DNA of 64,000 bases from IMG/VR virus record IMGVR_UViG_3300017917_001342, positions 124,001-188,000 of that record, one strand, 5' to 3'. Position 1 is the first letter of the stretch, and each line of letters opens with the position of its first letter. This document shows, in pieces, positions 77-60,436 of the stretch. A program made the translations under genes and the position numbers. Under the pieces are notes generated by a model, which was not told where the DNA came from, searched no databases, and saw nothing but the letters and a program-made list of their open reading frames with translations.

Positions 77-314
77 ATAAAGTTGTCATTAACCGGTTGA
101 CACTGTAACCTAAACCATATAGTAATATGGCTGTAGCAAACGGAGAACTGCAATGGATATGGACTTTGAAGACTATCTGAACTATGTTCGTCAACTGCTT
201 GAGCAAGCCGAAGAAGACGGCTTTGAGATTGACGGATAACTGACACTCGGTACTGCTTGGCGGTTAAAGCAGCTAAGTCGCCTTTGTTCCTAGAGGTAGA
301 GCCACACACTTAAT

Positions 315-398
315 GGGTCGTACCCCGCAAGGTGCGGGAGCGGACTGTAACTCCGTCGGGGAAACCCACGCTTGGTTCGATTCCAAGACGACCCACCA
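315..398 (+). tRNA. tRNA-Tyr(GTA)
   Basis: GGGTCGT/ACGACCC acceptor, CTGTAAC loop, long variable arm, ACCA. Confidence 0.9.
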
Positions 399-5518: not shown

Positions 5519-5593
5519 GGGTTTGTAGCTCAACGGTAGAGCAGGTGTCTCTAAAACATCGAGGTGTGGGTTCGAATCCCATCTTACCCGCCA
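5519..5593 (+). tRNA. amber suppressor tRNA (CTA)
   Basis: GGTGT-CTCTAAA-ACATC; acceptor has two U.U mismatches; GCCA. Confidence 0.8.
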
Positions 5594-7612: not shown

Positions 7613-7812
7613 TATAAAGGAGAATGCACTATGCATGGTTATCAATATCTATTGCCAGCATGTTTGATAGCATGGGCTGTTGCTGTTGTCACACTGTTTC
7701 AATGGCCGCCCTGTGCTAAAATGTATTGGGCAACAGATCAACGATTGAATTGTGTATTGACATCCTGGCACGGTCCTGTACTAAACAATGGTACGTGGAC
7801 CTGGTAAATTTT

Positions 7813-16829: not shown

Positions 16830-17376
16830 TGTAAACGACATGGGCCCGAACTAAGTATCGGATAATAAAATAAAAAGGCCATAAGCGCAGCAGCGCAACG
16901 TCTTAAGTGACCATTTGTAGCAGCCTAGGCTACACCGAGGCACATGTTAACTAGCGCAGGGTGACGAACCCGTAAGACGCAAGAATATTGGTACTGCTAC
17001 TTGAAATGCAGCTAAGTCGCTCGAATACGAGAGTAGAGCCACACGCAGGAGGGTCCAACTGAAAGAGAAGGCGCTACCAAGTACACCATCAACTAAGTTG
17101 AATGTTTGTGCGACTTTAGGTAGAGATGCTACCCAGCAGAGTTTGCAAATCTAATGAGCTCGCACTGAAATTGGAATACGGTGTTAAAAGTTGCAATACT
17201 GATTCAAACGTATTAGTATACCCATCTTAATACGTTGGTGTTAATGGCTTGTGGGTAACGGTAACTTAACTTAGCAATAGGTTAGACGCGGAGGGACTAT
17301 CAGCGAAAGCTTGCATACCCATAGATGTGATGCCGGGCTGGCAGGGAGGAATGAGACTCCCACTTTGATAGATTTT

Positions 17377-19729: not shown

Positions 19730-20971
19730 GTGATAATGGATCAATTTTTTCAAAAAACTGTAGGTAGCAATTTTGCATGCGGCTATAAATGGGCATGGAG
19801 TACCATACGGTTACAGACTAGAACAACAAATAGTTGTCATAGAACCGATCAAGACATTATCACACCAGAAACATTTGATTCATTTCATAACACACCAATT
19901 AAATTGCAAACTCGCAAAGCCATGTTAAATGGACAATGGCCGGGTCACGGTTGCGAGTACTGTAAACACATAGAAGATTCTGGTGGCATCAGTGATCGCA
20001 TGTATGCTAATGAACATATACACAACGCTTACATACCTCATGAACTAATAACTAATCCAAAATCGTTAAAAACTACACCCACTATGGTTGAGGTGTATTT
20101 TAGTAATCTTTGCAATATGAGTTGCATTTACTGTAATGAATCATTTAGCACAGTTTGGGAACAAGAAAAACTCAAACACAACGAGCCGATTGCATCTAAT
20201 TTACTGTCGATTAGTTCTGTCGATTACAAAAAAATGACAGACGCATTTTTTACTTGGTTAGATAAAAATATCTATTCGATATTTGAGCTAAACATTTTGG
20301 GCGGCGAACCATTCTTTCAACCAGAACTTGATAGAATGTTAGCATTTATAGAAACGCACCCAAATCCAGATCTAACACTTAAAATATTTTCTAACTTAAA
20401 AGTTCCTACACAAAAGTTTTCTACTATTCTACGTAAATTAGATAGTTTTATCGAATGTAATATAGTCAAACAAGTTGAAATAATAACCAGTATAGACTGT
20501 TGGGGGCCGGAACAAGAATACATACGTACAGGAATTTCTCTTCGTCAATGGGAAGAGAATTTTTCGTACATGGTAAAAAATCATCAAAATATTAACATAC
20601 GAACCCACGGTACCATCACCTGTCTTACCATTAAGACTATATATGGCTTAATTGAAAAAATTAACTTTTACAATAGTTTCAGATCTAACTCTGAGATAAT
20701 TTATTCGTCCGATTTGCTAGTAGAACCAGAGTTCTTACAGTCGGGTATATTCCCATCGGGTTTTTTCGACGATGATTTTGCTGCTATTTTACAAATAGTA
20801 CAAGAAGATTATACAAAAGAGAAAATAACCAATCATTGGTTATCTGTAAACAATCATCAGTATAAACCAGAACTTATTTCAAAACTAAAAGCATTTTTAA
20901 CAACACTTGATATCAGACGCAACACCAACTGGAAATCTACATTTAAATGGCTAGATGAGTTTCAAGTGTAA
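19730..20971 (+). CDS. radical SAM protein (twitch/SPASM-type N-terminus), paralog 1
   Basis: NLCNMSCIYC, GGEPFF, N-terminal C..KW / SCH / CEYC. Confidence 0.88.
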   Translation: MIMDQFFQKTVGSNFACGYKWAWSTIRLQTRTTNSCHRTDQDIITPETFDSFHNTPIKLQTRKAMLNGQWPGHGCEYCKHIEDSGGISDRMYANEHIHNAYIPHELITNPKSLKTTPTMVEVYFSNLCNMSCIYCNESFSTVWEQEKLKHNEPIASNLLSISSVDYKKMTDAFFTWLDKNIYSIFELNILGGEPFFQPELDRMLAFIETHPNPDLTLKIFSNLKVPTQKFSTILRKLDSFIECNIVKQVEIITSIDCWGPEQEYIRTGISLRQWEENFSYMVKNHQNINIRTHGTITCLTIKTIYGLIEKINFYNSFRSNSEIIYSSDLLVEPEFLQSGIFPSGFFDDDFAAILQIVQEDYTKEKITNHWLSVNNHQYKPELISKLKAFLTTLDIRRNTNWKSTFKWLDEFQV

Positions 20972-20973
20972 AC

Positions 20974-22209
20974 ATGGAAAATATGTTTGAAAAATTAACA
21001 GGTTATCGTGCCGGATGTGCAGCTAAATGGAATTGGAGCACAGTTTTTTTAAACCAAGGCACAACTGCTAGCTGCCACAGAACCGATACTGATACTGTAG
21101 ATCATATATCTATACACAATTTTCATAATACCCCGCTAAAGTTGAAAACACGTCAACTGATGCAGCAAGGACAATGGCCAGGGCATGGGTGTGAGTATTG
21201 TAAACATATAGAAAACTCCGGTGGTATCAGCGACAGAATGAATTCAAATTCTCTGTTTAATGGCAAAAAGATTCCGCACGAATTGCTTGTTAATACAGAT
21301 GCAATACACACAACGCCCACGGTACTAGAAATAAATTTTACCAATTTATGTAACATGAGTTGTATATATTGCAGCGAAGGATGGAGTTCTGTATGGGAAC
21401 AGGAAAATATCAAATTCAATGATCGCATTGAACAAGCCCCTAGACTATTAAAAGGCGCAGAGTACGAAAGAATCCTGTTTGAATTCTTTCAATGGTTAGA
21501 CACAAACGTCGAACATTTGTCAGACCTACACATATTAGGTGGGGAACCATTTATTATGCCAGAATTTGACAAAACCGTCGAGTTTCTAAAAACACGCAAG
21601 TTGCCAGATTTGAATTTGGTAGTAATTACCAATTTGAAAATAACCAGAGACAAGCTAACTCAACACCTGTCGGTATTGAATTCGCTATTAGACAACAATG
21701 CCATTGGATCTGTAAGAATAGTTGCTAGTTTAGATTGTTGGGGACCGGAACAAGAGTATATACGTACTGGATTGTCCTTGCAGCAATGGGAAGACAACTT
21801 TGCATTTATAGTAAAAAACTATCGTAACATAGACATCAATGTACACAGTACAATCACAGGTCTTTCTATAAAGACCACCGACAGTTTAATAGACAAAATC
21901 AACTATTACAGGACATTGCTAGATAACAATAAAAACATTATTCATTCTAAGAATTTTGTTACAGGCTTTAGTTACTTGAGTCCAAAAATTTACCCTTATG
22001 GTTTTTTTGATAGCGATTTTGAAAAAATATTGACCAAAATAACTGATAGTTATGAGCTAGAAGAAATGAAAGGCTATAAATTATCAATTGATAACGAGCC
22101 ATATAACCCAGCTCTAATAGAAGATTTAAAACGATATCTAGATAAATTGGATTTTAGAAGAAACACAAATTGGCGTAACTATTTTTCATGGTTAGACGAG
22201 TTTAATTAA
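20974..22209 (+). CDS. radical SAM protein, paralog 2
   Basis: NLCNMSCIYC, GGEPF. Confidence 0.88.
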   Translation: MENMFEKLTGYRAGCAAKWNWSTVFLNQGTTASCHRTDTDTVDHISIHNFHNTPLKLKTRQLMQQGQWPGHGCEYCKHIENSGGISDRMNSNSLFNGKKIPHELLVNTDAIHTTPTVLEINFTNLCNMSCIYCSEGWSSVWEQENIKFNDRIEQAPRLLKGAEYERILFEFFQWLDTNVEHLSDLHILGGEPFIMPEFDKTVEFLKTRKLPDLNLVVITNLKITRDKLTQHLSVLNSLLDNNAIGSVRIVASLDCWGPEQEYIRTGLSLQQWEDNFAFIVKNYRNIDINVHSTITGLSIKTTDSLIDKINYYRTLLDNNKNIIHSKNFVTGFSYLSPKIYPYGFFDSDFEKILTKITDSYELEEMKGYKLSIDNEPYNPALIEDLKRYLDKLDFRRNTNWRNYFSWLDEFN

Positions 22210-22210
22210 A

Positions 22211-23461
22211 ATGGAAGATCAGTTTTCAAAACTCACCAATGGAAAATTTGGATGTGGTTACAAATGGGCATGGAGCACAATTTTTTTACAGCAAGGGTCT
22301 AGCTCTAGTTGTCATCGTACTATGCAGGACTTTTTTGATGAACAAACTGTGCAACAGTTTCATAACTCTCCATTGAAGCTGCAAAGTCGTAAAGCCATGT
22401 TAGATGGTCAATGGCCGGGGCATGGTTGTGAATACTGCAAAAATATAGAGGCTGCTGGCGGTATTAGTGATAGACAACAAATAAACAAAAAATTTCAAGG
22501 TCTTATTGTACCTAAAGAACTGTTAACTGATTCTACTGCAATCAATGTATCGCCTACTATGATTGAATTGCATTTTAGTAATTTGTGTAATATGAGTTGC
22601 ATATATTGTAACCAACGATTCAGTTCGGTATGGGAACAAGAAAATTTAAAGCACGGCAACATATTTGCAGATACCGAATTTCTATTAAATCACAGTGCAA
22701 CCGGTCGTATGATAGATTCATTTTTTGATTGGCTGCACTACAATATAGGCAATTTAGTTAAAATTAACATACTTGGTGGTGAACCATTTTATCAATCTGA
22801 GTTTTATAGATTTATAGATTTCTTAGCCGAGCATCCAAATCCAAATTTAGACATTACTGTGTTTTCTAATTTAAAAGTTAATGAAAATAAATTTTCATCG
22901 GCATTGAAACGATTAGAAACTTTTGTAAAATCCAACATTGTCAAAAGTGTAGAAATAGTTGCTAGTTTAGATTGTTGGGGACCTGAACAAGAATACGTTA
23001 GAACTGGGCTGTCTTTACAACAATGGGAAGATAATTTTGCACTGTTGGTAAACAATTTTCAAGATATTGAAGTACAAATTCATGGCACAATATCAAGTTT
23101 GACTATTAAAACTATCCCAGATCTACTCAACAAGATTAATTTTTACAATAGTATGCGTAGTAAACACCCAATAAGTTACTCTAATAACATACTAGTGCAT
23201 CCAAATTGCTTACAACCTGGTATATTTCCTTTGGGGTTTTTTGATGATGATTTCAACAAAATACTGCCTCTTATACAAAATCAAGCAGAACACGATGAAA
23301 TGCAAGGCTATTTCAAAACCATTAACAATACAGACTACAATCCTCAATTGATAATTGAATTGAAACAATACCTAGACACGTTGGATATCAGACGACACAC
23401 AAATTGGAAAACAGTGTTTCCATGGTTAGATCAGTTCGATGTTGACAAACATCACAGTTAG
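22211..23461 (+). CDS. radical SAM protein, paralog 3
   Basis: NLCNMSCIYC, GGEPFY. Confidence 0.88.
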   Translation: MEDQFSKLTNGKFGCGYKWAWSTIFLQQGSSSSCHRTMQDFFDEQTVQQFHNSPLKLQSRKAMLDGQWPGHGCEYCKNIEAAGGISDRQQINKKFQGLIVPKELLTDSTAINVSPTMIELHFSNLCNMSCIYCNQRFSSVWEQENLKHGNIFADTEFLLNHSATGRMIDSFFDWLHYNIGNLVKINILGGEPFYQSEFYRFIDFLAEHPNPNLDITVFSNLKVNENKFSSALKRLETFVKSNIVKSVEIVASLDCWGPEQEYVRTGLSLQQWEDNFALLVNNFQDIEVQIHGTISSLTIKTIPDLLNKINFYNSMRSKHPISYSNNILVHPNCLQPGIFPLGFFDDDFNKILPLIQNQAEHDEMQGYFKTINNTDYNPQLIIELKQYLDTLDIRRHTNWKTVFPWLDQFDVDKHHS

Positions 23462-27129: not shown

Positions 27130-28251
27130 ATGGAAAACACTGATAAAGATTTTTATTGTGCAGCACCGTTTGTGAATAGATCGTACGATCCAAACGGTAA
27201 AGTTAAACCTTGTTGCGAATGGCACAACTTAGATACAACTGTCGACGATGAACAACAGTTGATTTCTCTACGATCTCAATTTTTACAAAACAAACCAAAT
27301 CCCTGTTGTAAAGTCTGTCATAAAACAGAAGCTGCTGGGGTACAATCTACTAGAAATGATTTTAACAACAGGTACGGTAGACCAACTGTACCTGTGCTGC
27401 GTCATTTGGATCTAAGTCTAGGCAATCTATGTAATTTCAAATGTAGAATGTGCAGCAGTTTTTTTAGCACAAAATGGGCCAGTGACGAACAAGCATTGGG
27501 ATTGATTCCACACAAGTTGTACAGACGTACCTGGGATGAATTGAAACATTTAGACATATCAAATGTAGATATGATCAAGTTCAAAGGTGGCGAGCCTTTT
27601 CTAGAACAAGAAACAATGATCAATACCCTAACTGCAATCTTATCTCAAAAAGGCTCGTTAGAAAATATTACAGTTGTTGTAAACACAAATGGATCTATAG
27701 AAATAGAACCAAGATTGATAGAGTTGTTGTCTCTTTGCAAAACTGTTAACTTAACAGTTAGTATAGATGGATACGGTAAAGTAAACGAATATCAACGCAC
27801 AGGCGCAGTATGGAATGTAATAGAAAAAAATCTATTAGATTTTCAAAAAAATCTCAACAATAACTTTGACTTATCTATATGGTCTGTGTGGACTATACTC
27901 AACATTACTAACTTAAAAACACTGTTAGGCTGGGTTACAACCAACTTGCCTAGATACAAAATCTATGGTACTACGCTGCATTTTCCAGAAGAGTTTGCTA
28001 TACGCAATATACCAGACCAACTAAAAACGCAATTTTTTAATGACATTAGCAATTGGTGTGAACTCGATCACAACGACGGTGTGCTAGAAAACAAATTACA
28101 GATTTTAAATGAGTTACAACAACAGCCTATAAAAACGATCAACGAAGTTAAATCTTACATAGATAGCCTTGACAAAGTTAGAAATGAGTCGTTTTCTTTA
28201 ATAGATCCTGTGATGTATGCGGCATTTTTTGAATCAACTGTTGACATATGA
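27130..28251 (+). CDS. radical SAM protein with twitch/SPASM domain
   Basis: CAAPF..PCC, NLCNFKCRMC, GGEPF. Confidence 0.88.
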   Translation: MENTDKDFYCAAPFVNRSYDPNGKVKPCCEWHNLDTTVDDEQQLISLRSQFLQNKPNPCCKVCHKTEAAGVQSTRNDFNNRYGRPTVPVLRHLDLSLGNLCNFKCRMCSSFFSTKWASDEQALGLIPHKLYRRTWDELKHLDISNVDMIKFKGGEPFLEQETMINTLTAILSQKGSLENITVVVNTNGSIEIEPRLIELLSLCKTVNLTVSIDGYGKVNEYQRTGAVWNVIEKNLLDFQKNLNNNFDLSIWSVWTILNITNLKTLLGWVTTNLPRYKIYGTTLHFPEEFAIRNIPDQLKTQFFNDISNWCELDHNDGVLENKLQILNELQQQPIKTINEVKSYIDSLDKVRNESFSLIDPVMYAAFFESTVDI

Positions 28252-29039: not shown

Positions 29040-29920
29040 CACGATATTAACGTTGTGAAACGTGGATGTTGTGTTTACGCATTGGGGGTTTAGCCTCAAC
29101 AGGATAAGTGCAGTGATGCACCCAAAGCTAGAAAGCCTACATACTAGCGCCAGCAGTGGTCCATCTAAACAAGCCTGAACTAGACTTGACTCGGGTTAAA
29201 CCGAAAGCAAGTCCCGTCCGTAGAAAGGCGGTAGGCAGTAAGTTAGGAATAGTGTCCGAAAGGATAGTTGCAGAGCCAGTCGGTGAGCGATAAGAGGGTT
29301 GGCGCCCAAACACTGTTCAGCCAAACTAACGAATGCTGAAAGTTAACAGGTAGGTACAGAGTCTGAGCCCGCAAGCAAAGGCATGGTACCATTTCGAGAG
29401 TGGAAGGGTTAGGCCCCGGATACTTGAAGAAACACTGATTAGTCCGCAAGACGAAAGGTATGAGGTGTGCTGTATTGGGTATGTCAAAAGCATATTCAGC
29501 AGCCGAGGTAGCACATCTCGGATAGGTTGCAAAATCAGCTAATGGTAAGCTAATTCCCTTCTAAGGAATCGATTGCAGGTTCAACTCCTGTTTTTGAAAA
29601 ATGCAAAGTCTACCTCGGTATGTAGTGTAAGGTGTCAAATACTTGAGGCGCAAGCCAATCAAGTTCAACAAAGCTCGCAAGGCAGCGTTGATTTGTGCTA
29701 GAAGTTTCGTAGCCCGCAAGGCTTAATGGTCCGCAAGATCAACGGAAAACAAGGTGCAGAATAGCTACATACGACGAGTCTACTGCCTGACTCTAAAAAC
29801 GGCGACACTGTTAATGGACTAGGTTACCGCAAGGGACTTAGTGGATGTCGGAAGAAAGCGGCTCGCAAGGCTGGCAATAATGTCCGAAGCGTTAACATCG
29901 AACGTGTAATCTCAGCGTTT
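29040..29920 (+). ncRNA. GOLLD-like large ncRNA (5' boundary uncertain)
   Basis: ~0.9 kb without credible ORF, at least 9 GCAA/GAAA-capped hairpins, GGTAGGTAC..GAGTCTGAG, GAGGTAGCACATCTC and terminal GTAATCTCAG blocks recalled from GOLLD; tRNA-cluster context. Confidence 0.6.
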
Positions 29921-38965: not shown

Positions 38966-39225
38966 CTGTTGCATTTTTAACTGCACTGTGCTATAGTGAG
39001 TTATTGATTATGCGAAAAAAGGTTCGTAGTAGCGGCTAGTAATCCAGGAACCTTGCGGCAAATAAGGTGAGAACGCCCGCCTCACACACCAGCAATGGTA
39101 AAGTAGCGAAAGCGAAGAGATGTAGGAATCTTGTCTATATGGCAAGTTGAAAACAGGGACCCTACTATTTGCCAATACCCATTAAGATCGTCTGTAGGCT
39201 AGCCAAATTTTTAAAAAGGTGTGTT

Positions 39226-51069: not shown

Positions 51070-52167
51070 ATGTCGTACCTTTTCACTAGTGAAAGTGTCA
51101 GCGAAGGGCATCCGGACAAAGTAGCAGATGCTATTAGTGATGCTGTTTTAGACATGGTAATGAGTCATAAAGATTCAGCAATGCGTTGTGCATGTGAAAC
51201 CCTGGTTACTACTAATCGTGTTGTGATTGCAGGCGAATACAAAGGCGTACTAGGTTCTAGCGCAGTTGATGACACTGTACGCAGTGTTATTAGACAAATA
51301 GGTTATGAACAACCAGGGTTTGATTGGCGTACCGTAGAAATTACAAACCTCATGCACGGCCAAAGTGCTGATATTGCACTTGGCACTGATAATTTTGGTG
51401 CAGGTGATCAAGGTCTTATGTTTGGCTATGCTTGCAACGAAAACAGCAACTACATGCCAAGTGCAATCTACTACAGTCACCGTATCGTAGAAGAACTAAC
51501 TAGACTGCGCAAGCTAGGCGGCGAAGAAAGCTGGCTTGGCCCAGACGCAAAAAGTCAAGTTACATTTGAATACGACGACAACAATAAACCTGTGCGTATT
51601 GCCAAAGTTGTTTGTAGTACACAGCATAGCGAGTCAGTTGACATTGTTCGTGTACGCGAAGTAGTAGAAACTATCATACGCGGTGTATTGCCTGCTAATC
51701 TAGTTGATACTAATACAGAATTCTACATTAACCCAACTGGACGTTTTGTTATCGGCGGACCAGATGGTGACACAGGCTTAACCGGTCGTAAGATCATTGT
51801 TGATACCTATGGTGGTTATGCACCGCACGGTGGTGGTGCGTTTAGTGGTAAAGATCCTACCAAAGTTGATCGCAGTGCTGCATATATGATGCGTTATCTT
51901 GCAAAGAACATTGTGGCAAGTGGTCGTGCTGATTGGGCAACTGTACAGGTCAGCTATGCTATTGGTGTTAAAGATCCAATGAGTTTCTACGTAGAAAGCA
52001 ACGGCGATAGCAGAGCTCTTACTGCATGGATTAAAGACAATGTTGATCTAACTCCCGCAGGAATTATTAAACATTTCGACTTGTTCAGACCTATCTATAG
52101 TGCTACAACTAACTACGGACACTTCGGCAAGAATGGCTTGCCATGGGAAAAGGTAGATCTATTCTAA
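51070..52167 (+). CDS. metK: S-adenosylmethionine synthetase
   Basis: FTSESVSEGHPDK, GAGDQGLMFG, GGGAFSGKDPTKVDRS. Confidence 0.97.
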   Translation: MSYLFTSESVSEGHPDKVADAISDAVLDMVMSHKDSAMRCACETLVTTNRVVIAGEYKGVLGSSAVDDTVRSVIRQIGYEQPGFDWRTVEITNLMHGQSADIALGTDNFGAGDQGLMFGYACNENSNYMPSAIYYSHRIVEELTRLRKLGGEESWLGPDAKSQVTFEYDDNNKPVRIAKVVCSTQHSESVDIVRVREVVETIIRGVLPANLVDTNTEFYINPTGRFVIGGPDGDTGLTGRKIIVDTYGGYAPHGGGAFSGKDPTKVDRSAAYMMRYLAKNIVASGRADWATVQVSYAIGVKDPMSFYVESNGDSRALTAWIKDNVDLTPAGIIKHFDLFRPIYSATTNYGHFGKNGLPWEKVDLF

Positions 52168-56856: not shown

Positions 56857-57954
56857 ATGGACAAAAAATATGATATGGCTGTATTCATCGGCCGCCTTGA
56901 GCCCTTTACTGAAGCACACCGTCGAAATGTGCAAACTGCGCTCAACAATGCAAAAAAAGTCACTGTGATTATTGGCTCTGCAAATGCGCCACGCAGTCAT
57001 CGTTTGCCTTTTACTTTTGAAGAACGTGCAGCAATGGTCAAAGCTGCGTTTCCGGCAGATGCAGATCGTATCTACTGCGAACCTGTTGAAGATACTATCT
57101 ACAACGACGAACAGTGGGTTAAAAACGTACAAGCTGCTGTGAAGCATGCGTTTACTGCTGCATTTGGTGCTTGGCATCCACTGGCAAAAGTTGCACTGGT
57201 TGGGCACGGCAAAGACAGCACTAGCTTTTACCTAAAACTGTTTCCACAGTGGGAAAGCATCAACGTACCTAATCACAAAAATATCAATGCAACTGATGTT
57301 CGTAAAAAGTTTTTCAGCGTTGATTCGATGTATGAACCAATTATGAATGTGCTGTCGCTAGACGAACTTCCGCAGTCGACTATTGATTTTCTACACAAAT
57401 TTTCTATGTCGCCTGACTACAGCAACATTGTAGATGAATACGAATTTGTTAAAAAGTATCGCAGTGCATGGGATGCTGCACCGTTTCCTCCGACATTTGT
57501 CACTGTTGACAGTGTGATTGTGCAGAGTGGTCACATCTTGCTTGTAGAACGTGGTGCTCGTCCTGGTAAAGGACTTTGGGCATTGCCGGGTGGGTTCCTT
57601 CGTGCATACGACGAACTTGACAGCAAATCTGGTAAGATGAAGCCAGCAGACAAGACTATGCTCGACGGTGCTATCCGCGAACTGCGTGAAGAAACTAAGA
57701 TCAAAGTGCCAGAACCAGTTCTGCGTGGCAATGTAAAAGCATCACAGGTGTTTGCTGATCCGAACCGCAGCAGCCGCGGGCGTACTATTACACATGCGTT
57801 TCTTATTCATCTTCCGCCAAACGAAGAACTGCCTAAAGTCAAAGGCAGCGACGATGCAAAGAAAGCCAAATGGGTACCGCTTGCAGACGTTAAACGCAAT
57901 ATGATGTTTGAAGATCACTATGACATCATTTTGTCTATGACTGCACTGATCTAA
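56857..57954 (+). CDS. nadM: bifunctional NMN adenylyltransferase / Nudix ADP-ribose hydrolase
   Basis: FIGRLEPFTEAH, IGSAN, LPGGF, AIRELREET Nudix box. Confidence 0.92.
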   Translation: MDKKYDMAVFIGRLEPFTEAHRRNVQTALNNAKKVTVIIGSANAPRSHRLPFTFEERAAMVKAAFPADADRIYCEPVEDTIYNDEQWVKNVQAAVKHAFTAAFGAWHPLAKVALVGHGKDSTSFYLKLFPQWESINVPNHKNINATDVRKKFFSVDSMYEPIMNVLSLDELPQSTIDFLHKFSMSPDYSNIVDEYEFVKKYRSAWDAAPFPPTFVTVDSVIVQSGHILLVERGARPGKGLWALPGGFLRAYDELDSKSGKMKPADKTMLDGAIRELREETKIKVPEPVLRGNVKASQVFADPNRSSRGRTITHAFLIHLPPNEELPKVKGSDDAKKAKWVPLADVKRNMMFEDHYDIILSMTALI

Positions 57955-59056: not shown

Positions 59057-60436
59057 ATGACTAACCTAATCCTAAACACAGACAGCTACAAAGCCAGCCA
59101 TTGGGGACAATACCCTAAAGGCACTGAAAACGTTTTCAGCTACATCGAAAGCCGCGGTGGCATCTTTGATCGCACAGTGGTATTTGGACCGCAGATGTTT
59201 GTCAAAAACACGCTGATGAAAGGTGTCACAGTAGACAACGTTAAAGAAGCCAAAGAAATGTGGACTGCACATGGCGAGCCTTTTAACGAAGACGGCTGGA
59301 TGGACATTGCAACACGACTCGGTGGTAAACTACCTCTGCTAATCAAAGCTGTACCCGAAGGCACTGTGCTACCAACTCACAACGCTATGGTTACAGTTGA
59401 AGCTACTGATCCCAAGCACTACTGGTTGACCAGCTACGTTGAAACACCACTGCTTCGTGCAGTTTGGTACCCAACTACAGTTGCTACTCTCAGCTGGCAT
59501 ATCAAGCAGTTGATCAAAGCTGCAATTGAAAAGACTAGTGATGTTCCTGAACAGATTGCATTCAAACTGCATGACTTTGGTGCTCGCGGTGTCAGCAGCG
59601 AAGAAACTGCTATGATCGGTGGCGCTGCACACCTTGTCAACTTCATGGGTACTGACACTATGAGCGGCATTGTTGCTGCTAAGCGTTTCTATCATGAACC
59701 CATGGCAGGTTTCAGTATTCCTGCTGCTGAACACAGCACTATGACTAGCTGGGAACGCGATCACGAAGTAGATGCGTATGCAAACATGATTGATCTCTAT
59801 GCTAAGCCTGGTGCACTGTTTGCAGTTGTTAGCGACAGCTATGACTTTTGGAATGCTGTTAGCAACATCTGGGGCGAGCAACTGCGAGAACGTGTGATCA
59901 ACAGTGGTGCAACACTGGTAGTGCGTCCTGATAGCGGTGATCCTACTACTGTGCCTGTTAAAGCTATTCAGTTGCTTGCTGAAAAGTTTGGTTACACTGT
60001 AAACAGCAAAGGTTACAAAGTTCTGCCTAGCTGTGTGCGAGTGATCCAAGGTGACGGTATCACACTGGACAGCATCAAAGTTATCATCAAGAATCTCACT
60101 GATGCTGGCTTTGCTATTGACAACCTTGCATTTGGTATGGGCGGCGGACTTGGTCAGATGGTCAACCGTGACACACTGAAGTTTGCACAGAAAGCCAGTG
60201 CTGCTAAAGTCAACGGTGTATGGCGCGATGTCTACAAAGACCCCGTAACTGACCACGGTAAGCGTAGCAAGCGCGGTCGTCTTGCACTGGTACGTGACCG
60301 TGGACACTGGGAAACTGTACGCGAAGAAGATCGCATGGGTGTTGATTACCTGGAACCAATCTTCTGCAACGGCGAACTGCTGCGTGACCAAACCTTTGCA
60401 GATATTCGCGCTCGTAGCGAAATTGCACAAGACTAA
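59057..60436 (+). CDS. nadV: nicotinamide phosphoribosyltransferase
   Basis: TDSYKASH, LHDFGARG, PAAEHST, VSDSYD, RPDSGDP, QGDGI. Confidence 0.95.
   Translation: MTNLILNTDSYKASHWGQYPKGTENVFSYIESRGGIFDRTVVFGPQMFVKNTLMKGVTVDNVKEAKEMWTAHGEPFNEDGWMDIATRLGGKLPLLIKAVPEGTVLPTHNAMVTVEATDPKHYWLTSYVETPLLRAVWYPTTVATLSWHIKQLIKAAIEKTSDVPEQIAFKLHDFGARGVSSEETAMIGGAAHLVNFMGTDTMSGIVAAKRFYHEPMAGFSIPAAEHSTMTSWERDHEVDAYANMIDLYAKPGALFAVVSDSYDFWNAVSNIWGEQLRERVINSGATLVVRPDSGDPTTVPVKAIQLLAEKFGYTVNSKGYKVLPSCVRVIQGDGITLDSIKVIIKNLTDAGFAIDNLAFGMGGGLGQMVNRDTLKFAQKASAAKVNGVWRDVYKDPVTDHGKRSKRGRLALVRDRGHWETVREEDRMGVDYLEPIFCNGELLRDQTFADIRARSEIAQD

What the first reader, a model, noticed from the sequence alone, without database searches (positions are those of the whole stretch)
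249..307. Unnamed three-way-junction motif present twice (249-307 and 16990-17044)
Both loci read GGTA-CTGC[10-12 nt]GCAG-CTAAGTCG-C[hairpin]G-TAGAGCC-ACAC. The fixed linkers are identical while both hairpins differ in sequence yet still pair (CCT/AGG vs CTCG/CGAG), which is covariation within one genome. I do not recognise the family. The conserved single-stranded core suggests a ribozyme or a protein/ligand-binding site.
Basis: seen in the sequence. Interest (0 to 1): 0.6.

Follow-up and report, generated by a model that had tools for sequence, protein, structure and literature searches.

The report
New small RNA in phage tRNA arrays
The two look-alike 55-nt stretches belong to a previously undescribed, widespread family of small folded RNAs that sit like extra "pseudo-tRNA" modules between the tRNA genes of giant aquatic phages; what the RNA does is still unknown.

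Summary
Both copies (249-303 and 16990-17040, each followed by an 8-nt tail) match a pattern that never occurs in shuffled sequence. The window comes from a 518-kb viral contig with 46 tRNA genes, and two more copies lie just upstream of the window. The motif defines a family of about 150 distinct sequences in viral and metagenomic contigs. Almost all sit inside same-strand tRNA arrays, typically 6 nt after one tRNA (often tRNA-Asn) and about 10 nt before the next. No Rfam 15 family and no paper found matches it.

Covariation strongly supports both hairpins and refines the fold. P3 extends into the "linkers" (U43-A67, C44-G66, bulged A65) and stacks on an invariant 3-bp P1. P2 branches off between A4 and a pentanucleotide that is either CUAAG or UUAAA. 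This strand topology resembles a tRNA acceptor/T-arm stack with one side arm, and also a type III hammerhead, but the motif meets the membership criteria of neither.

Most likely it is co-transcribed with the tRNAs and cut out by tRNA-processing enzymes as a stable 60-70-nt RNA whose invariant junction binds a partner. That function is inferred. Self-cleavage is neither excluded nor supported.

The parts
249..303 (+). Copy 1 core (type A, CUAAG). P1 is G249-C303, G250-C302 and U251.G301. A252 is unpaired. P2 is 253-258 paired with 267-272 (loop 259-266). The pentanucleotide CUAAG is at 273-277. Extended P3 is U278-A300 and C279-G299, with bulged A298, then 280-285 paired with 292-297 (loop 286-291).
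   Evidence: Sequence. CM scores are 61-63 bits. The fold comes from family covariation and from an independent RNAalifold run.
304..311 (+). Copy 1 tail ACACACUU. The family consensus is AAACACAU.
   Evidence: The tail logo shows C at +6 in 90% and A at +2 in 89% of 137 contexts.
315..398 (+). tRNA-Tyr(GTA), starting 11 nt after the last base of P1. This is the typical downstream neighbour arrangement.
   Evidence: ARAGORN. The family-wide distance is 9-14 nt with a mode of 10.
16990..17040 (+). Copy 2 core (type A). P1 is 16990-16992 paired with 17038-17040. A16993 is unpaired. P2 is 16994-16997 paired with 17008-17011 (loop 16998-17007). CUAAG is at 17012-17016. Extended P3 is U17017-A17037 and C17018-G17036, with bulged A17035, then 17019-17022 paired with 17031-17034 (loop 17023-17030).
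   Evidence: Sequence. CM scores are 62-65 bits. Fold evidence is as for copy 1.
17041..17048 (+). Copy 2 tail ACACGCAG.
16950..16983 (+). Accessory 5' hairpin (ACUA-GCGCAGG-stem/loop-CCGUAAGNCGC-AAG). It precedes a subset of family members at a fixed distance of 5-6 nt.
   Evidence: Twelve distinct versions were found, all 5-6 nt upstream of GGUA, and the inner stem covaries (GGAG/CUCC, GGAU/AUCC, GGGU/ACCC, GGUG/CACC).

Best explanation
The motif is a member of a previously undescribed family of small structured RNAs carried in the tRNA gene arrays of large, mostly aquatic phages. It is transcribed in the tRNA sense as part of the polycistronic tRNA precursor.

The RNA folds into a compact three-way junction. 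An invariant 3-bp P1 (GGU/GCC) stacks end-to-end on an extended P3 along one continuous 3' strand. P2 branches from the other strand, flanked by A4 and a YUAAR pentanucleotide. This is the same strand topology as a tRNA acceptor/T-arm stack in which the D and anticodon arms are replaced by a single hairpin.

Because the motif occupies a 'tRNA slot' with tRNA-like spacing, it is most likely released by the enzymes that cut out the neighbouring tRNAs. RNase P at the 5' end of the next tRNA, followed by 3' trimming, would define its 3' side. RNase P or RNase E acting in the A-rich ...ACAC linker would define its 5' side. The product would be a stable RNA of about 60-70 nt. Its absolutely invariant junction residues (GGUA, YUAAR, the A bulge, GCC) would then act as a sequence-specific docking site for a partner, most probably a protein that handles or attacks tRNA.

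Shown: the family, the strand, the fold of P2 and P3, the junction pairs, and the genomic context. Inferred: formation of P1, the processing route, stability as a separate RNA, and the existence of a binding partner.
For: Family. About 150 distinct sequences were found, from 38 viral hits, 132 metagenome hits and 139 hits with the refined model.

Fold. 94-96% of cells are paired against 76-77% in shuffles. Double-sided changes number 87 and 228 cells against 24 and 61 expected. No shuffle out of 500 reaches these values, and slid controls give covariation of at most 0.09 against 0.47-0.53. U43-A67 reads UA 99, AU 3, UG 1, with none unpaired. U3.G68 becomes U3-A68 in two sequences. RNAalifold recovers the same fold on an unfitted MAFFT alignment.

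Strand. G.U at 45-64 occurs in 94 of 103 sequences and would be an A.C mismatch on the other strand. All neighbouring tRNAs are on the same strand.

Context. 141 of 143 distinct contexts have same-strand tRNAs. A tRNA ends 4-13 nt upstream (mode 6) in 72 of 135 contexts, and a tRNA starts 9-14 nt downstream in 69 of 140. Position -1 is a pyrimidine in 94% and -2 is mostly A, as for the tRNAs in the same arrays.

Invariance. G1, G2, U3, A4, U39, A41, C44, C69 and C70 are identical in all 118 distinct sequences, while the stems covary freely. This points to sequence-specific recognition rather than mere helix formation.

No promoter or terminator was called next to either window copy on the + strand.
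Against: There is no expression or end-mapping data. P1 has only 3 bp, never varies (apart from U.G to U-A), and single-sequence MFE folding predicts it in only 30 of 149 cores. The loops carry no T-loop or anticodon-loop consensus, and P2 ranges from 12 to 57 nt, so the resemblance to tRNA is topological only. ARAGORN and the tRNA model do not call the motif. No partner protein gene recurs next to it; the neighbouring ORFs are homing endonucleases, RNR and similar genes. Window copy 2 has no tRNA within 300 nt on either side, and window copy 1 has none within 170 nt upstream.
Confidence: 0.5

Rival explanations
1. A new class of small self-cleaving ribozyme that cuts the polycistronic tRNA precursor. 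It would have hammerhead-like topology: two coaxial helices, with a branch helix flanked by 1 nt (A4, the putative cleavage nucleotide) and a CU-A-containing strand.
For: The RNA is small, with an invariant junction and freely covarying stems of variable length. It occurs in several copies per genome. Other small ribozymes (HDV-like theta ribozymes) are known next to phage tRNAs (PMC10879173, found). The C38:G42 / U38:A42 coupling resembles the hammerhead C3-G8 pair (this comparison is from my own knowledge). The counts are CG 82 and UA 57, with no C..A or U..G.
Against: No hammerhead, twister, twister-sister, pistol, hatchet, hairpin or HDV model hits any of about 12 copies at E<=5-10. After refinement only about 7 conserved nucleotides remain unpaired. 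The hammerhead catalytic residues (G5, G8, G12, the GAAA strand) are absent. Distances to tRNA ends vary (4-13 nt and 9-14 nt), so cleavage could not create mature tRNA termini.
Confidence: 0.12
2. A purely cis-acting element of the tRNA operon with no function as a free RNA. It could be a folding insulator, a processing enhancer for the neighbouring tRNAs, or an RNA-polymerase-modifying (put-like) antitermination signal for long untranslated arrays.
For: The motif always lies inside same-strand tRNA arrays at fixed short distances. The conserved AAACAC-type linkers on both sides are not seen in tRNA-tRNA spacers.
Against: A mere spacer would not need nine absolutely invariant junction residues, nor two stable subtypes that co-occur in one array. 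Many tRNA-Asn genes in the same arrays do without it (40 of 83). Copies are often internal and are not placed after recognisable promoters.
Confidence: 0.2
3. An RNA anti-CRISPR (Racr): a solitary mimic of a type I-F CRISPR repeat. The base of P2 plus the next five bases (CUGC...GCAG|CUAAG) resembles the Cas6f hairpin and the start of the 5' handle. The repeat sequence used for this comparison was recalled from memory.
For: The four P2 base pairs and CUAAG match my recollection of the I-F repeat. Racrs are phage-encoded (PMC10651486).
Against: No CRISPR-DR family hits at E<=5-10. The base of P2 covaries in distant members (A-U, U-A, C-G/C-G, G-C). Loop length runs from 3 to 19 nt. Half the family reads UUAAA instead. 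The equally invariant GGUA, P3 junction and GCC have no counterpart in a repeat. The Racr paper mentions no tRNA context.
Confidence: 0.03
4. A ligand-sensing riboswitch aptamer.
For: The RNA is a compact junction with conserved core nucleotides, as many aptamers are.
Against: There is no downstream ORF, Shine-Dalgarno sequence or terminator. The next tRNA starts 9-14 nt after P1 in half the cases, and no terminator was called at either window copy on the + strand. No Rfam riboswitch hit was obtained.
Confidence: 0.03
5. A DNA-level element: a recombination or mobility site, with the flanking AAACAC as a target-site duplication.
For: AAACAC-like sequence lies on both sides. Homing endonuclease genes are common in these arrays.
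Against: G.U pairs at conserved positions work only on the tRNA-sense strand. Orientation relative to tRNAs is strict. tRNA-Asn spacers without the motif do not carry AAACAC.
Confidence: 0.04

Closest known systems
tRNA (acceptor/T-arm coaxial stack) and reduced tRNA-like RNAs
   Same: The 5' and 3' ends pair, and that helix continues along an unbroken 3' strand into a hairpin arm. The rest of the molecule is inserted in the 5' strand. The motif lies in a tRNA slot of an array with tRNA-like spacing and a pyrimidine at -1.
   Different: P1 has only 3 bp. There is one side arm instead of D plus anticodon arms. There is no T-loop, no anticodon loop and no encoded CCA (the tail is AAACACAU). It is not detected by ARAGORN or the Rfam tRNA model.
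Phage T4 stable RNAs species 1 and 2 (rnaC, rnaD)
   Same: These are non-tRNA small stable RNAs of unknown function encoded inside a phage tRNA cluster next to a Seg homing endonuclease gene.
   Different: They are 119-139 nt long and show no sequence or structure similarity. The best model hit in the T4 region is 9 bits.
Type III hammerhead ribozyme
   Same: It is a three-way junction closed by the termini. Two helices are coaxial, and the branch helix is flanked by a single nucleotide and a strand beginning C-U-N-A.
   Different: The core letters differ (CUAAG/UUAAA plus Watson-Crick pairs instead of CUGAUGA...GAAA). No Rfam hammerhead model hits, and cleavage is untested.
HDV-like theta ribozymes of gut phages (PMC10879173)
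   Same: They are small structured RNAs found directly beside phage tRNA genes, often in phages that carry suppressor tRNAs.
   Different: Theta ribozymes are nested double pseudoknots. This motif has no segment complementary to its 5' end in the required position, and it gets no HDV-family hit.
skipping-rope and GOLLD RNAs
   Same: They are orphan structured RNAs found near tRNAs in phages, and both are present in this very window.
   Different: They are unrelated in sequence and fold. Neither model matches the motif loci.

Membership tests
Hammerhead ribozyme | Three-way junction with the termini (or a loop) closing one stem | tested here: met
   P1, P2 and P3 are arranged as in type III.
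Hammerhead ribozyme | Conserved core CUGAUGA ... GAAA, scored by the Rfam hammerhead covariance models | tested here: not met
   The junction strands read CUAAG/UUAAA and AGA, and part of them is Watson-Crick paired. No hammerhead hit appears at E<=5-10 on any of about 12 copies.
Hammerhead ribozyme | Site-specific self-cleavage | not testable with these tools
   This needs an in-vitro transcription and cleavage assay.
HDV-like / theta ribozyme | Nested double pseudoknot in which the 5' strand pairs with sequence 3' of the first hairpin | tested here: not met
   No complement to GGUAC(U) follows P2, by inspection. No HDV-family hit was obtained.
tRNA | Cloverleaf with a 7-nt anticodon loop and a T-loop, detected by ARAGORN or Rfam RF00005 | tested here: not met
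   The motif is not called. P2 loops are 3-19 nt and P3 loops 3-13 nt, with no consensus.
tRNA | Acceptor helix stacked on an arm through a continuous 3' strand | tested here: met
   U43-A67 and C44-G66 directly abut G68-C70 of P1. P1 itself is inferred.
RNA anti-CRISPR (CRISPR repeat mimic) | Near-identity to a CRISPR repeat across its length | tested here: not met
   No CRISPR-DR hit was obtained. The stem base covaries and the loop length varies.
Riboswitch | Aptamer followed by an expression platform controlling a downstream gene | tested here: not met
   A tRNA follows within 9-14 nt, and no terminator was called on the + strand.
T4 rnaC/rnaD | Sequence and structure homology | tested here: not met
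   Model R2 with filters off gives at most 9 bits across the T4 tRNA region.
Any Rfam 15 family | Covariance-model match | tested here: not met
   Gathering-threshold scans of the window and 13 loci, and E-value scans of both window copies and 8 further loci, gave only tRNA-type hits beside the motif.

The most novel reading that the evidence does not exclude
The motif is a new class of small self-cleaving ribozyme with hammerhead-like architecture but a different catalytic core. Giant phages would use it to dice their long tRNA precursors independently of host RNases.
Probability: 0.1. Interest if true: 0.85.

Novelty: new member of a known kind. Interest (0 to 1): 0.62.

Why it matters
Giant phages carry tRNA arrays that are now viewed as tools for translation takeover and for evading tRNA-targeting defences. 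These arrays also hold orphan RNAs such as GOLLD and skipping-rope. This motif adds a compact, very well supported RNA family of about 55 nt, with about 150 distinct sequences, nine invariant nucleotides, two stable subtypes and an optional accessory hairpin. It appears absent from cellular genomes, apart from three short tRNA-array contigs binned into MAGs that are probably phage DNA, and it was not detected in cultured phages, although that check was weak. Its size and clean covariation make it an easy target for structure determination and for simple tests (self-cleavage, RNase P processing, pull-down). Whatever binds its invariant junction is likely to be a conserved player in phage-host conflict over tRNA or in tRNA maturation.

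Tried and rejected
(1) Model R1 was built with my dot-bracket string shifted by one column in P2 and P3. Its pair counts are meaningless, and the slid control at -1 exposed the error. It was rebuilt as R2.

(2) I considered an extended P1 (GGUACU/AGAGCC with an A.A mismatch) competing with P2. This is rejected because positions 5-37 and 6-36 covary (A-U, U-A, C-G, G-C) while the 3' strand stays fixed.

(3) I considered a D-arm-like pairing G37-C69, prompted by the resemblance of AGCUAAGUCG...GUAGAGC to a tRNA D arm. This is rejected because position 37 varies with position 5 and not with C69. The resemblance may still reflect ancestry.

(4) Loop-loop kissing between P2 and P3 found no consistent complementarity by inspection, and the loops are not conserved.

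(5) blastn of the motif alone, and of a tRNA-Asn-motif-tRNA-Pro unit, against 50,697 cultured-phage records found no match beyond single tRNAs. For a 55-nt motif this search is weak, so absence from cultured phages is not proven.

(6) The first viral pattern ended in ...CCAC, which is a window-specific tail. It returned only chance hits plus the source contig.

(7) A search for a recurrent neighbouring protein gene found only Seg-like GIY-YIG and HNH endonucleases, RNR, ferritin-like and CHAP proteins, and no RNA-binding candidate.

(8) Literature searches by sequence strings and by topic found no description of the motif.

(9) Single-sequence MFE folding gives z-scores near zero for the window copies, so thermodynamics alone would not have flagged them.

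Full report
**Observation**

A composite pattern built from their shared letters hits only these two sites in the 64-kb window and none of 100 dinucleotide-preserving shuffles. In a pairwise alignment, similarity begins abruptly at GGTAC and ends at GCCACAC, and the flanks are unrelated. This is therefore a discrete unit of 51-55 nt plus a short tail.

**Setting**

The window holds 46 same-strand tRNA genes, a GOLLD RNA and a skipping-rope RNA. It is part of a 518,643-bp IMG/VR viral contig (loci L007 and L012 are the source contig). Copy 1 ends 11 nt before tRNA-Tyr. The flank fetched upstream of the window shows two more copies on the same contig, at L007:7504-7579 and 7620-7684 (window position 1 corresponds to L007 position 8042). 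These follow a tRNA-Met and a small accessory hairpin.

**A family, not a pair**

Relaxed pattern scans of viral contigs returned many true relatives mixed with chance hits in coding DNA. True relatives share four features:
- an invariant GGUA at the 5' end;
- a hairpin (P2);
- CUAAGUC or UUAAAUC, followed by a second hairpin (P3);
- AGAGCC and an A-rich tail, AAACACAU.

A covariance model found 38 copies in viral loci. After one metagenome scan it found 132 more, of which 103 were distinct. A refined model found 139 in 100 loci. Many source contigs are 150-520 kb long. Metagenome records include TARA and other marine assemblies.

Two scans of 185,579 species-representative bacterial and archaeal genomes gave 0 and 3 hits. 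The three hits are 0.7-3.1-kb tRNA-array contigs binned into MAGs of three different phyla, and are most simply explained as phage DNA.

No Rfam 15 family matches any copy at permissive thresholds. Full-text searches found no description of the motif.

**Fold**

My first model carried an off-by-one structure string, which the slid control exposed. All counts below come from the corrected models.

| Measure | Viral alignment | Metagenome alignment |
|---|---|---|
| Cells paired, observed | 96.4% | 94.2% |
| Cells paired, shuffled | 75.8% | 77.1% |
| Cells with double-sided change, observed | 87 | 228 |
| Cells with double-sided change, expected | 24 | 61 |
| Shuffles reaching the observed value | 0 of 500 | 0 of 500 |
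| Covariation score | 0.535 | 0.470 |

Slid controls give covariation of at most 0.09 in both alignments.

All five P2 pairs and four P3 pairs show compensatory changes. Pair 45-64 alternates between G.U, A-U and G-C.

Sequences found in flanks were not constrained by the search pattern, and they revealed further pairs.
- U43 and A67 swap together to A and U in three sequences and read U.G once, with none unpaired.
- C44-G66 is invariant and A65 is bulged.
- G68 becomes A twice, which keeps its pair with U3.

RNAalifold, run on the plain MAFFT alignment, predicts the same structure independently, including pairs 43-67 and 44-66, the bulge, and P1.

The refined picture is as follows. P1 (G1-C70, G2-C69, U3.G68) stacks directly on the extended P3 through a continuous 3' strand. 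P2 branches from the opposite strand between A4 and a pentanucleotide.

That pentanucleotide comes in two forms, CUAAG (type A) and UUAAA (type B). Its first and last letters are C..G in 82 sequences and U..A in 57. Among structurally valid hits they are never U..G, and C..A occurs only once, in a hit that looks like chance coding sequence; two other outliers begin with G. C..A and U..G do occur among the chance hits of the same scan. This fits a 38:42 pair, but it may reflect a single ancient split into two subtypes.

Both subtypes co-occur in the same arrays and are sometimes directly adjacent. G1, G2, U3, A4, U39, A41, C44, C69 and C70 are identical in all 118 distinct sequences examined. 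Conserved G.U pairs place the RNA on the tRNA-sense strand.

**Context**

Of 143 distinct contexts, 141 have same-strand tRNAs in the fetched locus, and none has only opposite-strand tRNAs.
- A tRNA ends 4-13 nt upstream (mode 6) in 72 of 135 contexts. It is tRNA-Asn(GTT) in 43 of the 74 neighbours tallied and tRNA-Met in 14.
- A tRNA begins 9-14 nt after P1 (mode 10) in 69 of 140 contexts.

These spacings resemble the inter-tRNA spacers of 6-11 nt seen in the window.

Position -1 is a pyrimidine in 94% of copies and -2 is usually A, as for the tRNAs of the same arrays. However, the motif prefers CAC where tRNAs prefer WAU. The 3' tail AAACACAU is far more conserved than tRNA trailers, with C at +6 in 90%.

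Neighbouring ORFs are mainly Seg-like GIY-YIG and HNH homing endonucleases, RNR subunits and similar genes. No candidate RNA-binding partner recurs. A 30-nt accessory hairpin with its own covariation sits 5-6 nt upstream in 12 distinct cases, including window copy 2.

**What it is not**

- It is not a tRNA. ARAGORN and the Rfam tRNA model do not call it, and loops range from 3 to 19 nt with no anticodon or T-loop consensus.
- It is not homologous to T4 rnaC or rnaD, the classic non-tRNA RNAs of a phage tRNA cluster.
- It is not a hammerhead by membership. The topology matches type III, but the core letters and all Rfam hammerhead models fail.
- It is not HDV-like, because the required 5'-strand complement is missing.
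- It is not a riboswitch in the usual sense, because the next tRNA follows almost at once and no terminator is present.
- The resemblance of CUGC...GCAG|CUAAG to a type I-F CRISPR repeat (recalled from memory) does not hold up. No CRISPR-DR model hits, the stem base covaries, half the family reads UUAAA, and the rest of the motif has no counterpart in a repeat.

**Most likely mechanism**

The motif behaves like an extra module in a tRNA operon. It has the same strand, the same spacing, a pyrimidine at -1, and a helical topology like the acceptor/T-arm stack that tRNA-processing enzymes recognise.

I therefore think it is co-transcribed with the tRNAs and excised to give a stable RNA of about 60-70 nt. 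RNase P acting at the next tRNA, followed by 3' trimming, would set the 3' side. RNase P or RNase E would cut on the 5' side.

Nine residues are invariant while the stems covary freely. This argues that the junction is read sequence-specifically by a partner, most plausibly a protein that handles or targets tRNA. All of this functional part is inference (confidence about 0.5).

A cis-only role in operon processing or transcription (about 0.2) and self-cleavage by a new ribozyme class (about 0.1-0.12) remain open.

**Verdict**

This is a genuine and apparently undescribed phage RNA family with an unusually clean structural signal. Its function is unknown but testable, and it deserves follow-up.

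Noticed in passing
L007:7504-7579 and L007:7620-7684 (same contig, 360-540 nt upstream of window position 1): Two further copies of the motif, both of the UUAAA subtype. They follow tRNA-Met and the accessory hairpin. The source phage therefore has at least four copies.
   Followed up: yes
window 16950-16983: An accessory hairpin (ACUA-GCGCAGG-stem/loop-CCGUAAGNCGC-AAG) lies 5-6 nt upstream of a subset of motif copies. Twelve distinct versions show a covarying inner stem.
   Followed up: partly
window 16866-16949: A noncoding block is conserved with a 381-kb viral contig (L046). It includes a hairpin whose stem sequence differs between the two but still pairs. It may be another structured RNA.
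   Followed up: no
window 17049-17376: About 330 nt downstream of copy 2 have no ORF of 40 aa or more and no tRNA call. 17049-17200 also gave no Rfam hit at E<=10, and 17201-17376 none at gathering threshold. The stretch contains hairpins that look tRNA-like by eye (about 17109-17166).
   Followed up: no
window 29462-29918 and 39057-39173: A GOLLD RNA (234 bits) has tRNA-Arg(TCT) embedded at 29527-29600, and a skipping-rope RNA scores 46.9 bits.
   Followed up: no
window 5519-5593: A tRNA with anticodon CTA (called tRNA-Pyl by ARAGORN) would be an amber-suppressor type. A TTA-anticodon tRNA sits next to a motif copy in one metagenome locus. This may indicate stop-codon recoding, which I did not examine.
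   Followed up: no
window 19730-23461 and 27130-28251: Four paralogous radical-SAM-like ORFs (three in tandem) are interleaved with tRNA genes.
   Followed up: no
window 51070-52167, 56857-57954, 59057-60436: These ORFs encode SAM synthetase, an NMNAT-Nudix fusion and a NAMPT-type phosphoribosyltransferase, which are auxiliary metabolic genes for SAM and NAD supply.
   Followed up: no
L007:7925-8025 and L029:455-551: A conserved noncoding block of about 100 nt lies just before tRNA-Ser(GCT) in two different phage contigs and ends in a TATAAT-like box.
   Followed up: no
flanks of the motif family-wide (for example window 243-248 and 304-311): An AAACAC-like linker occurs on both sides of the motif (-6..-1 and +1..+6). 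It is absent from ordinary tRNA-tRNA spacers in the same arrays. Its meaning is unknown.
   Followed up: partly
L045:601-723 and L022:14498-14620: The Rfam tRNA model matches stretches 123 nt long, which suggests tRNA genes with an insertion of about 50 nt.
   Followed up: no
L464, L465, L466: Short tRNA-array contigs carrying the motif are binned into MAGs of Phycisphaerales, Desulfonatronospira and Emticicia. They are probably phage contamination of the bins.
   Followed up: partly
123 motif-bearing loci: Seg-like GIY-YIG homing endonuclease ORFs occur in 27 loci and HNH endonucleases in about 10. This echoes segB in the T4 tRNA cluster.
   Followed up: partly
window 153-239: A 28-codon ORF sits between the preceding tRNA-Ser and copy 1. 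Unlike most family members, copy 1 does not directly follow a tRNA.
   Followed up: no
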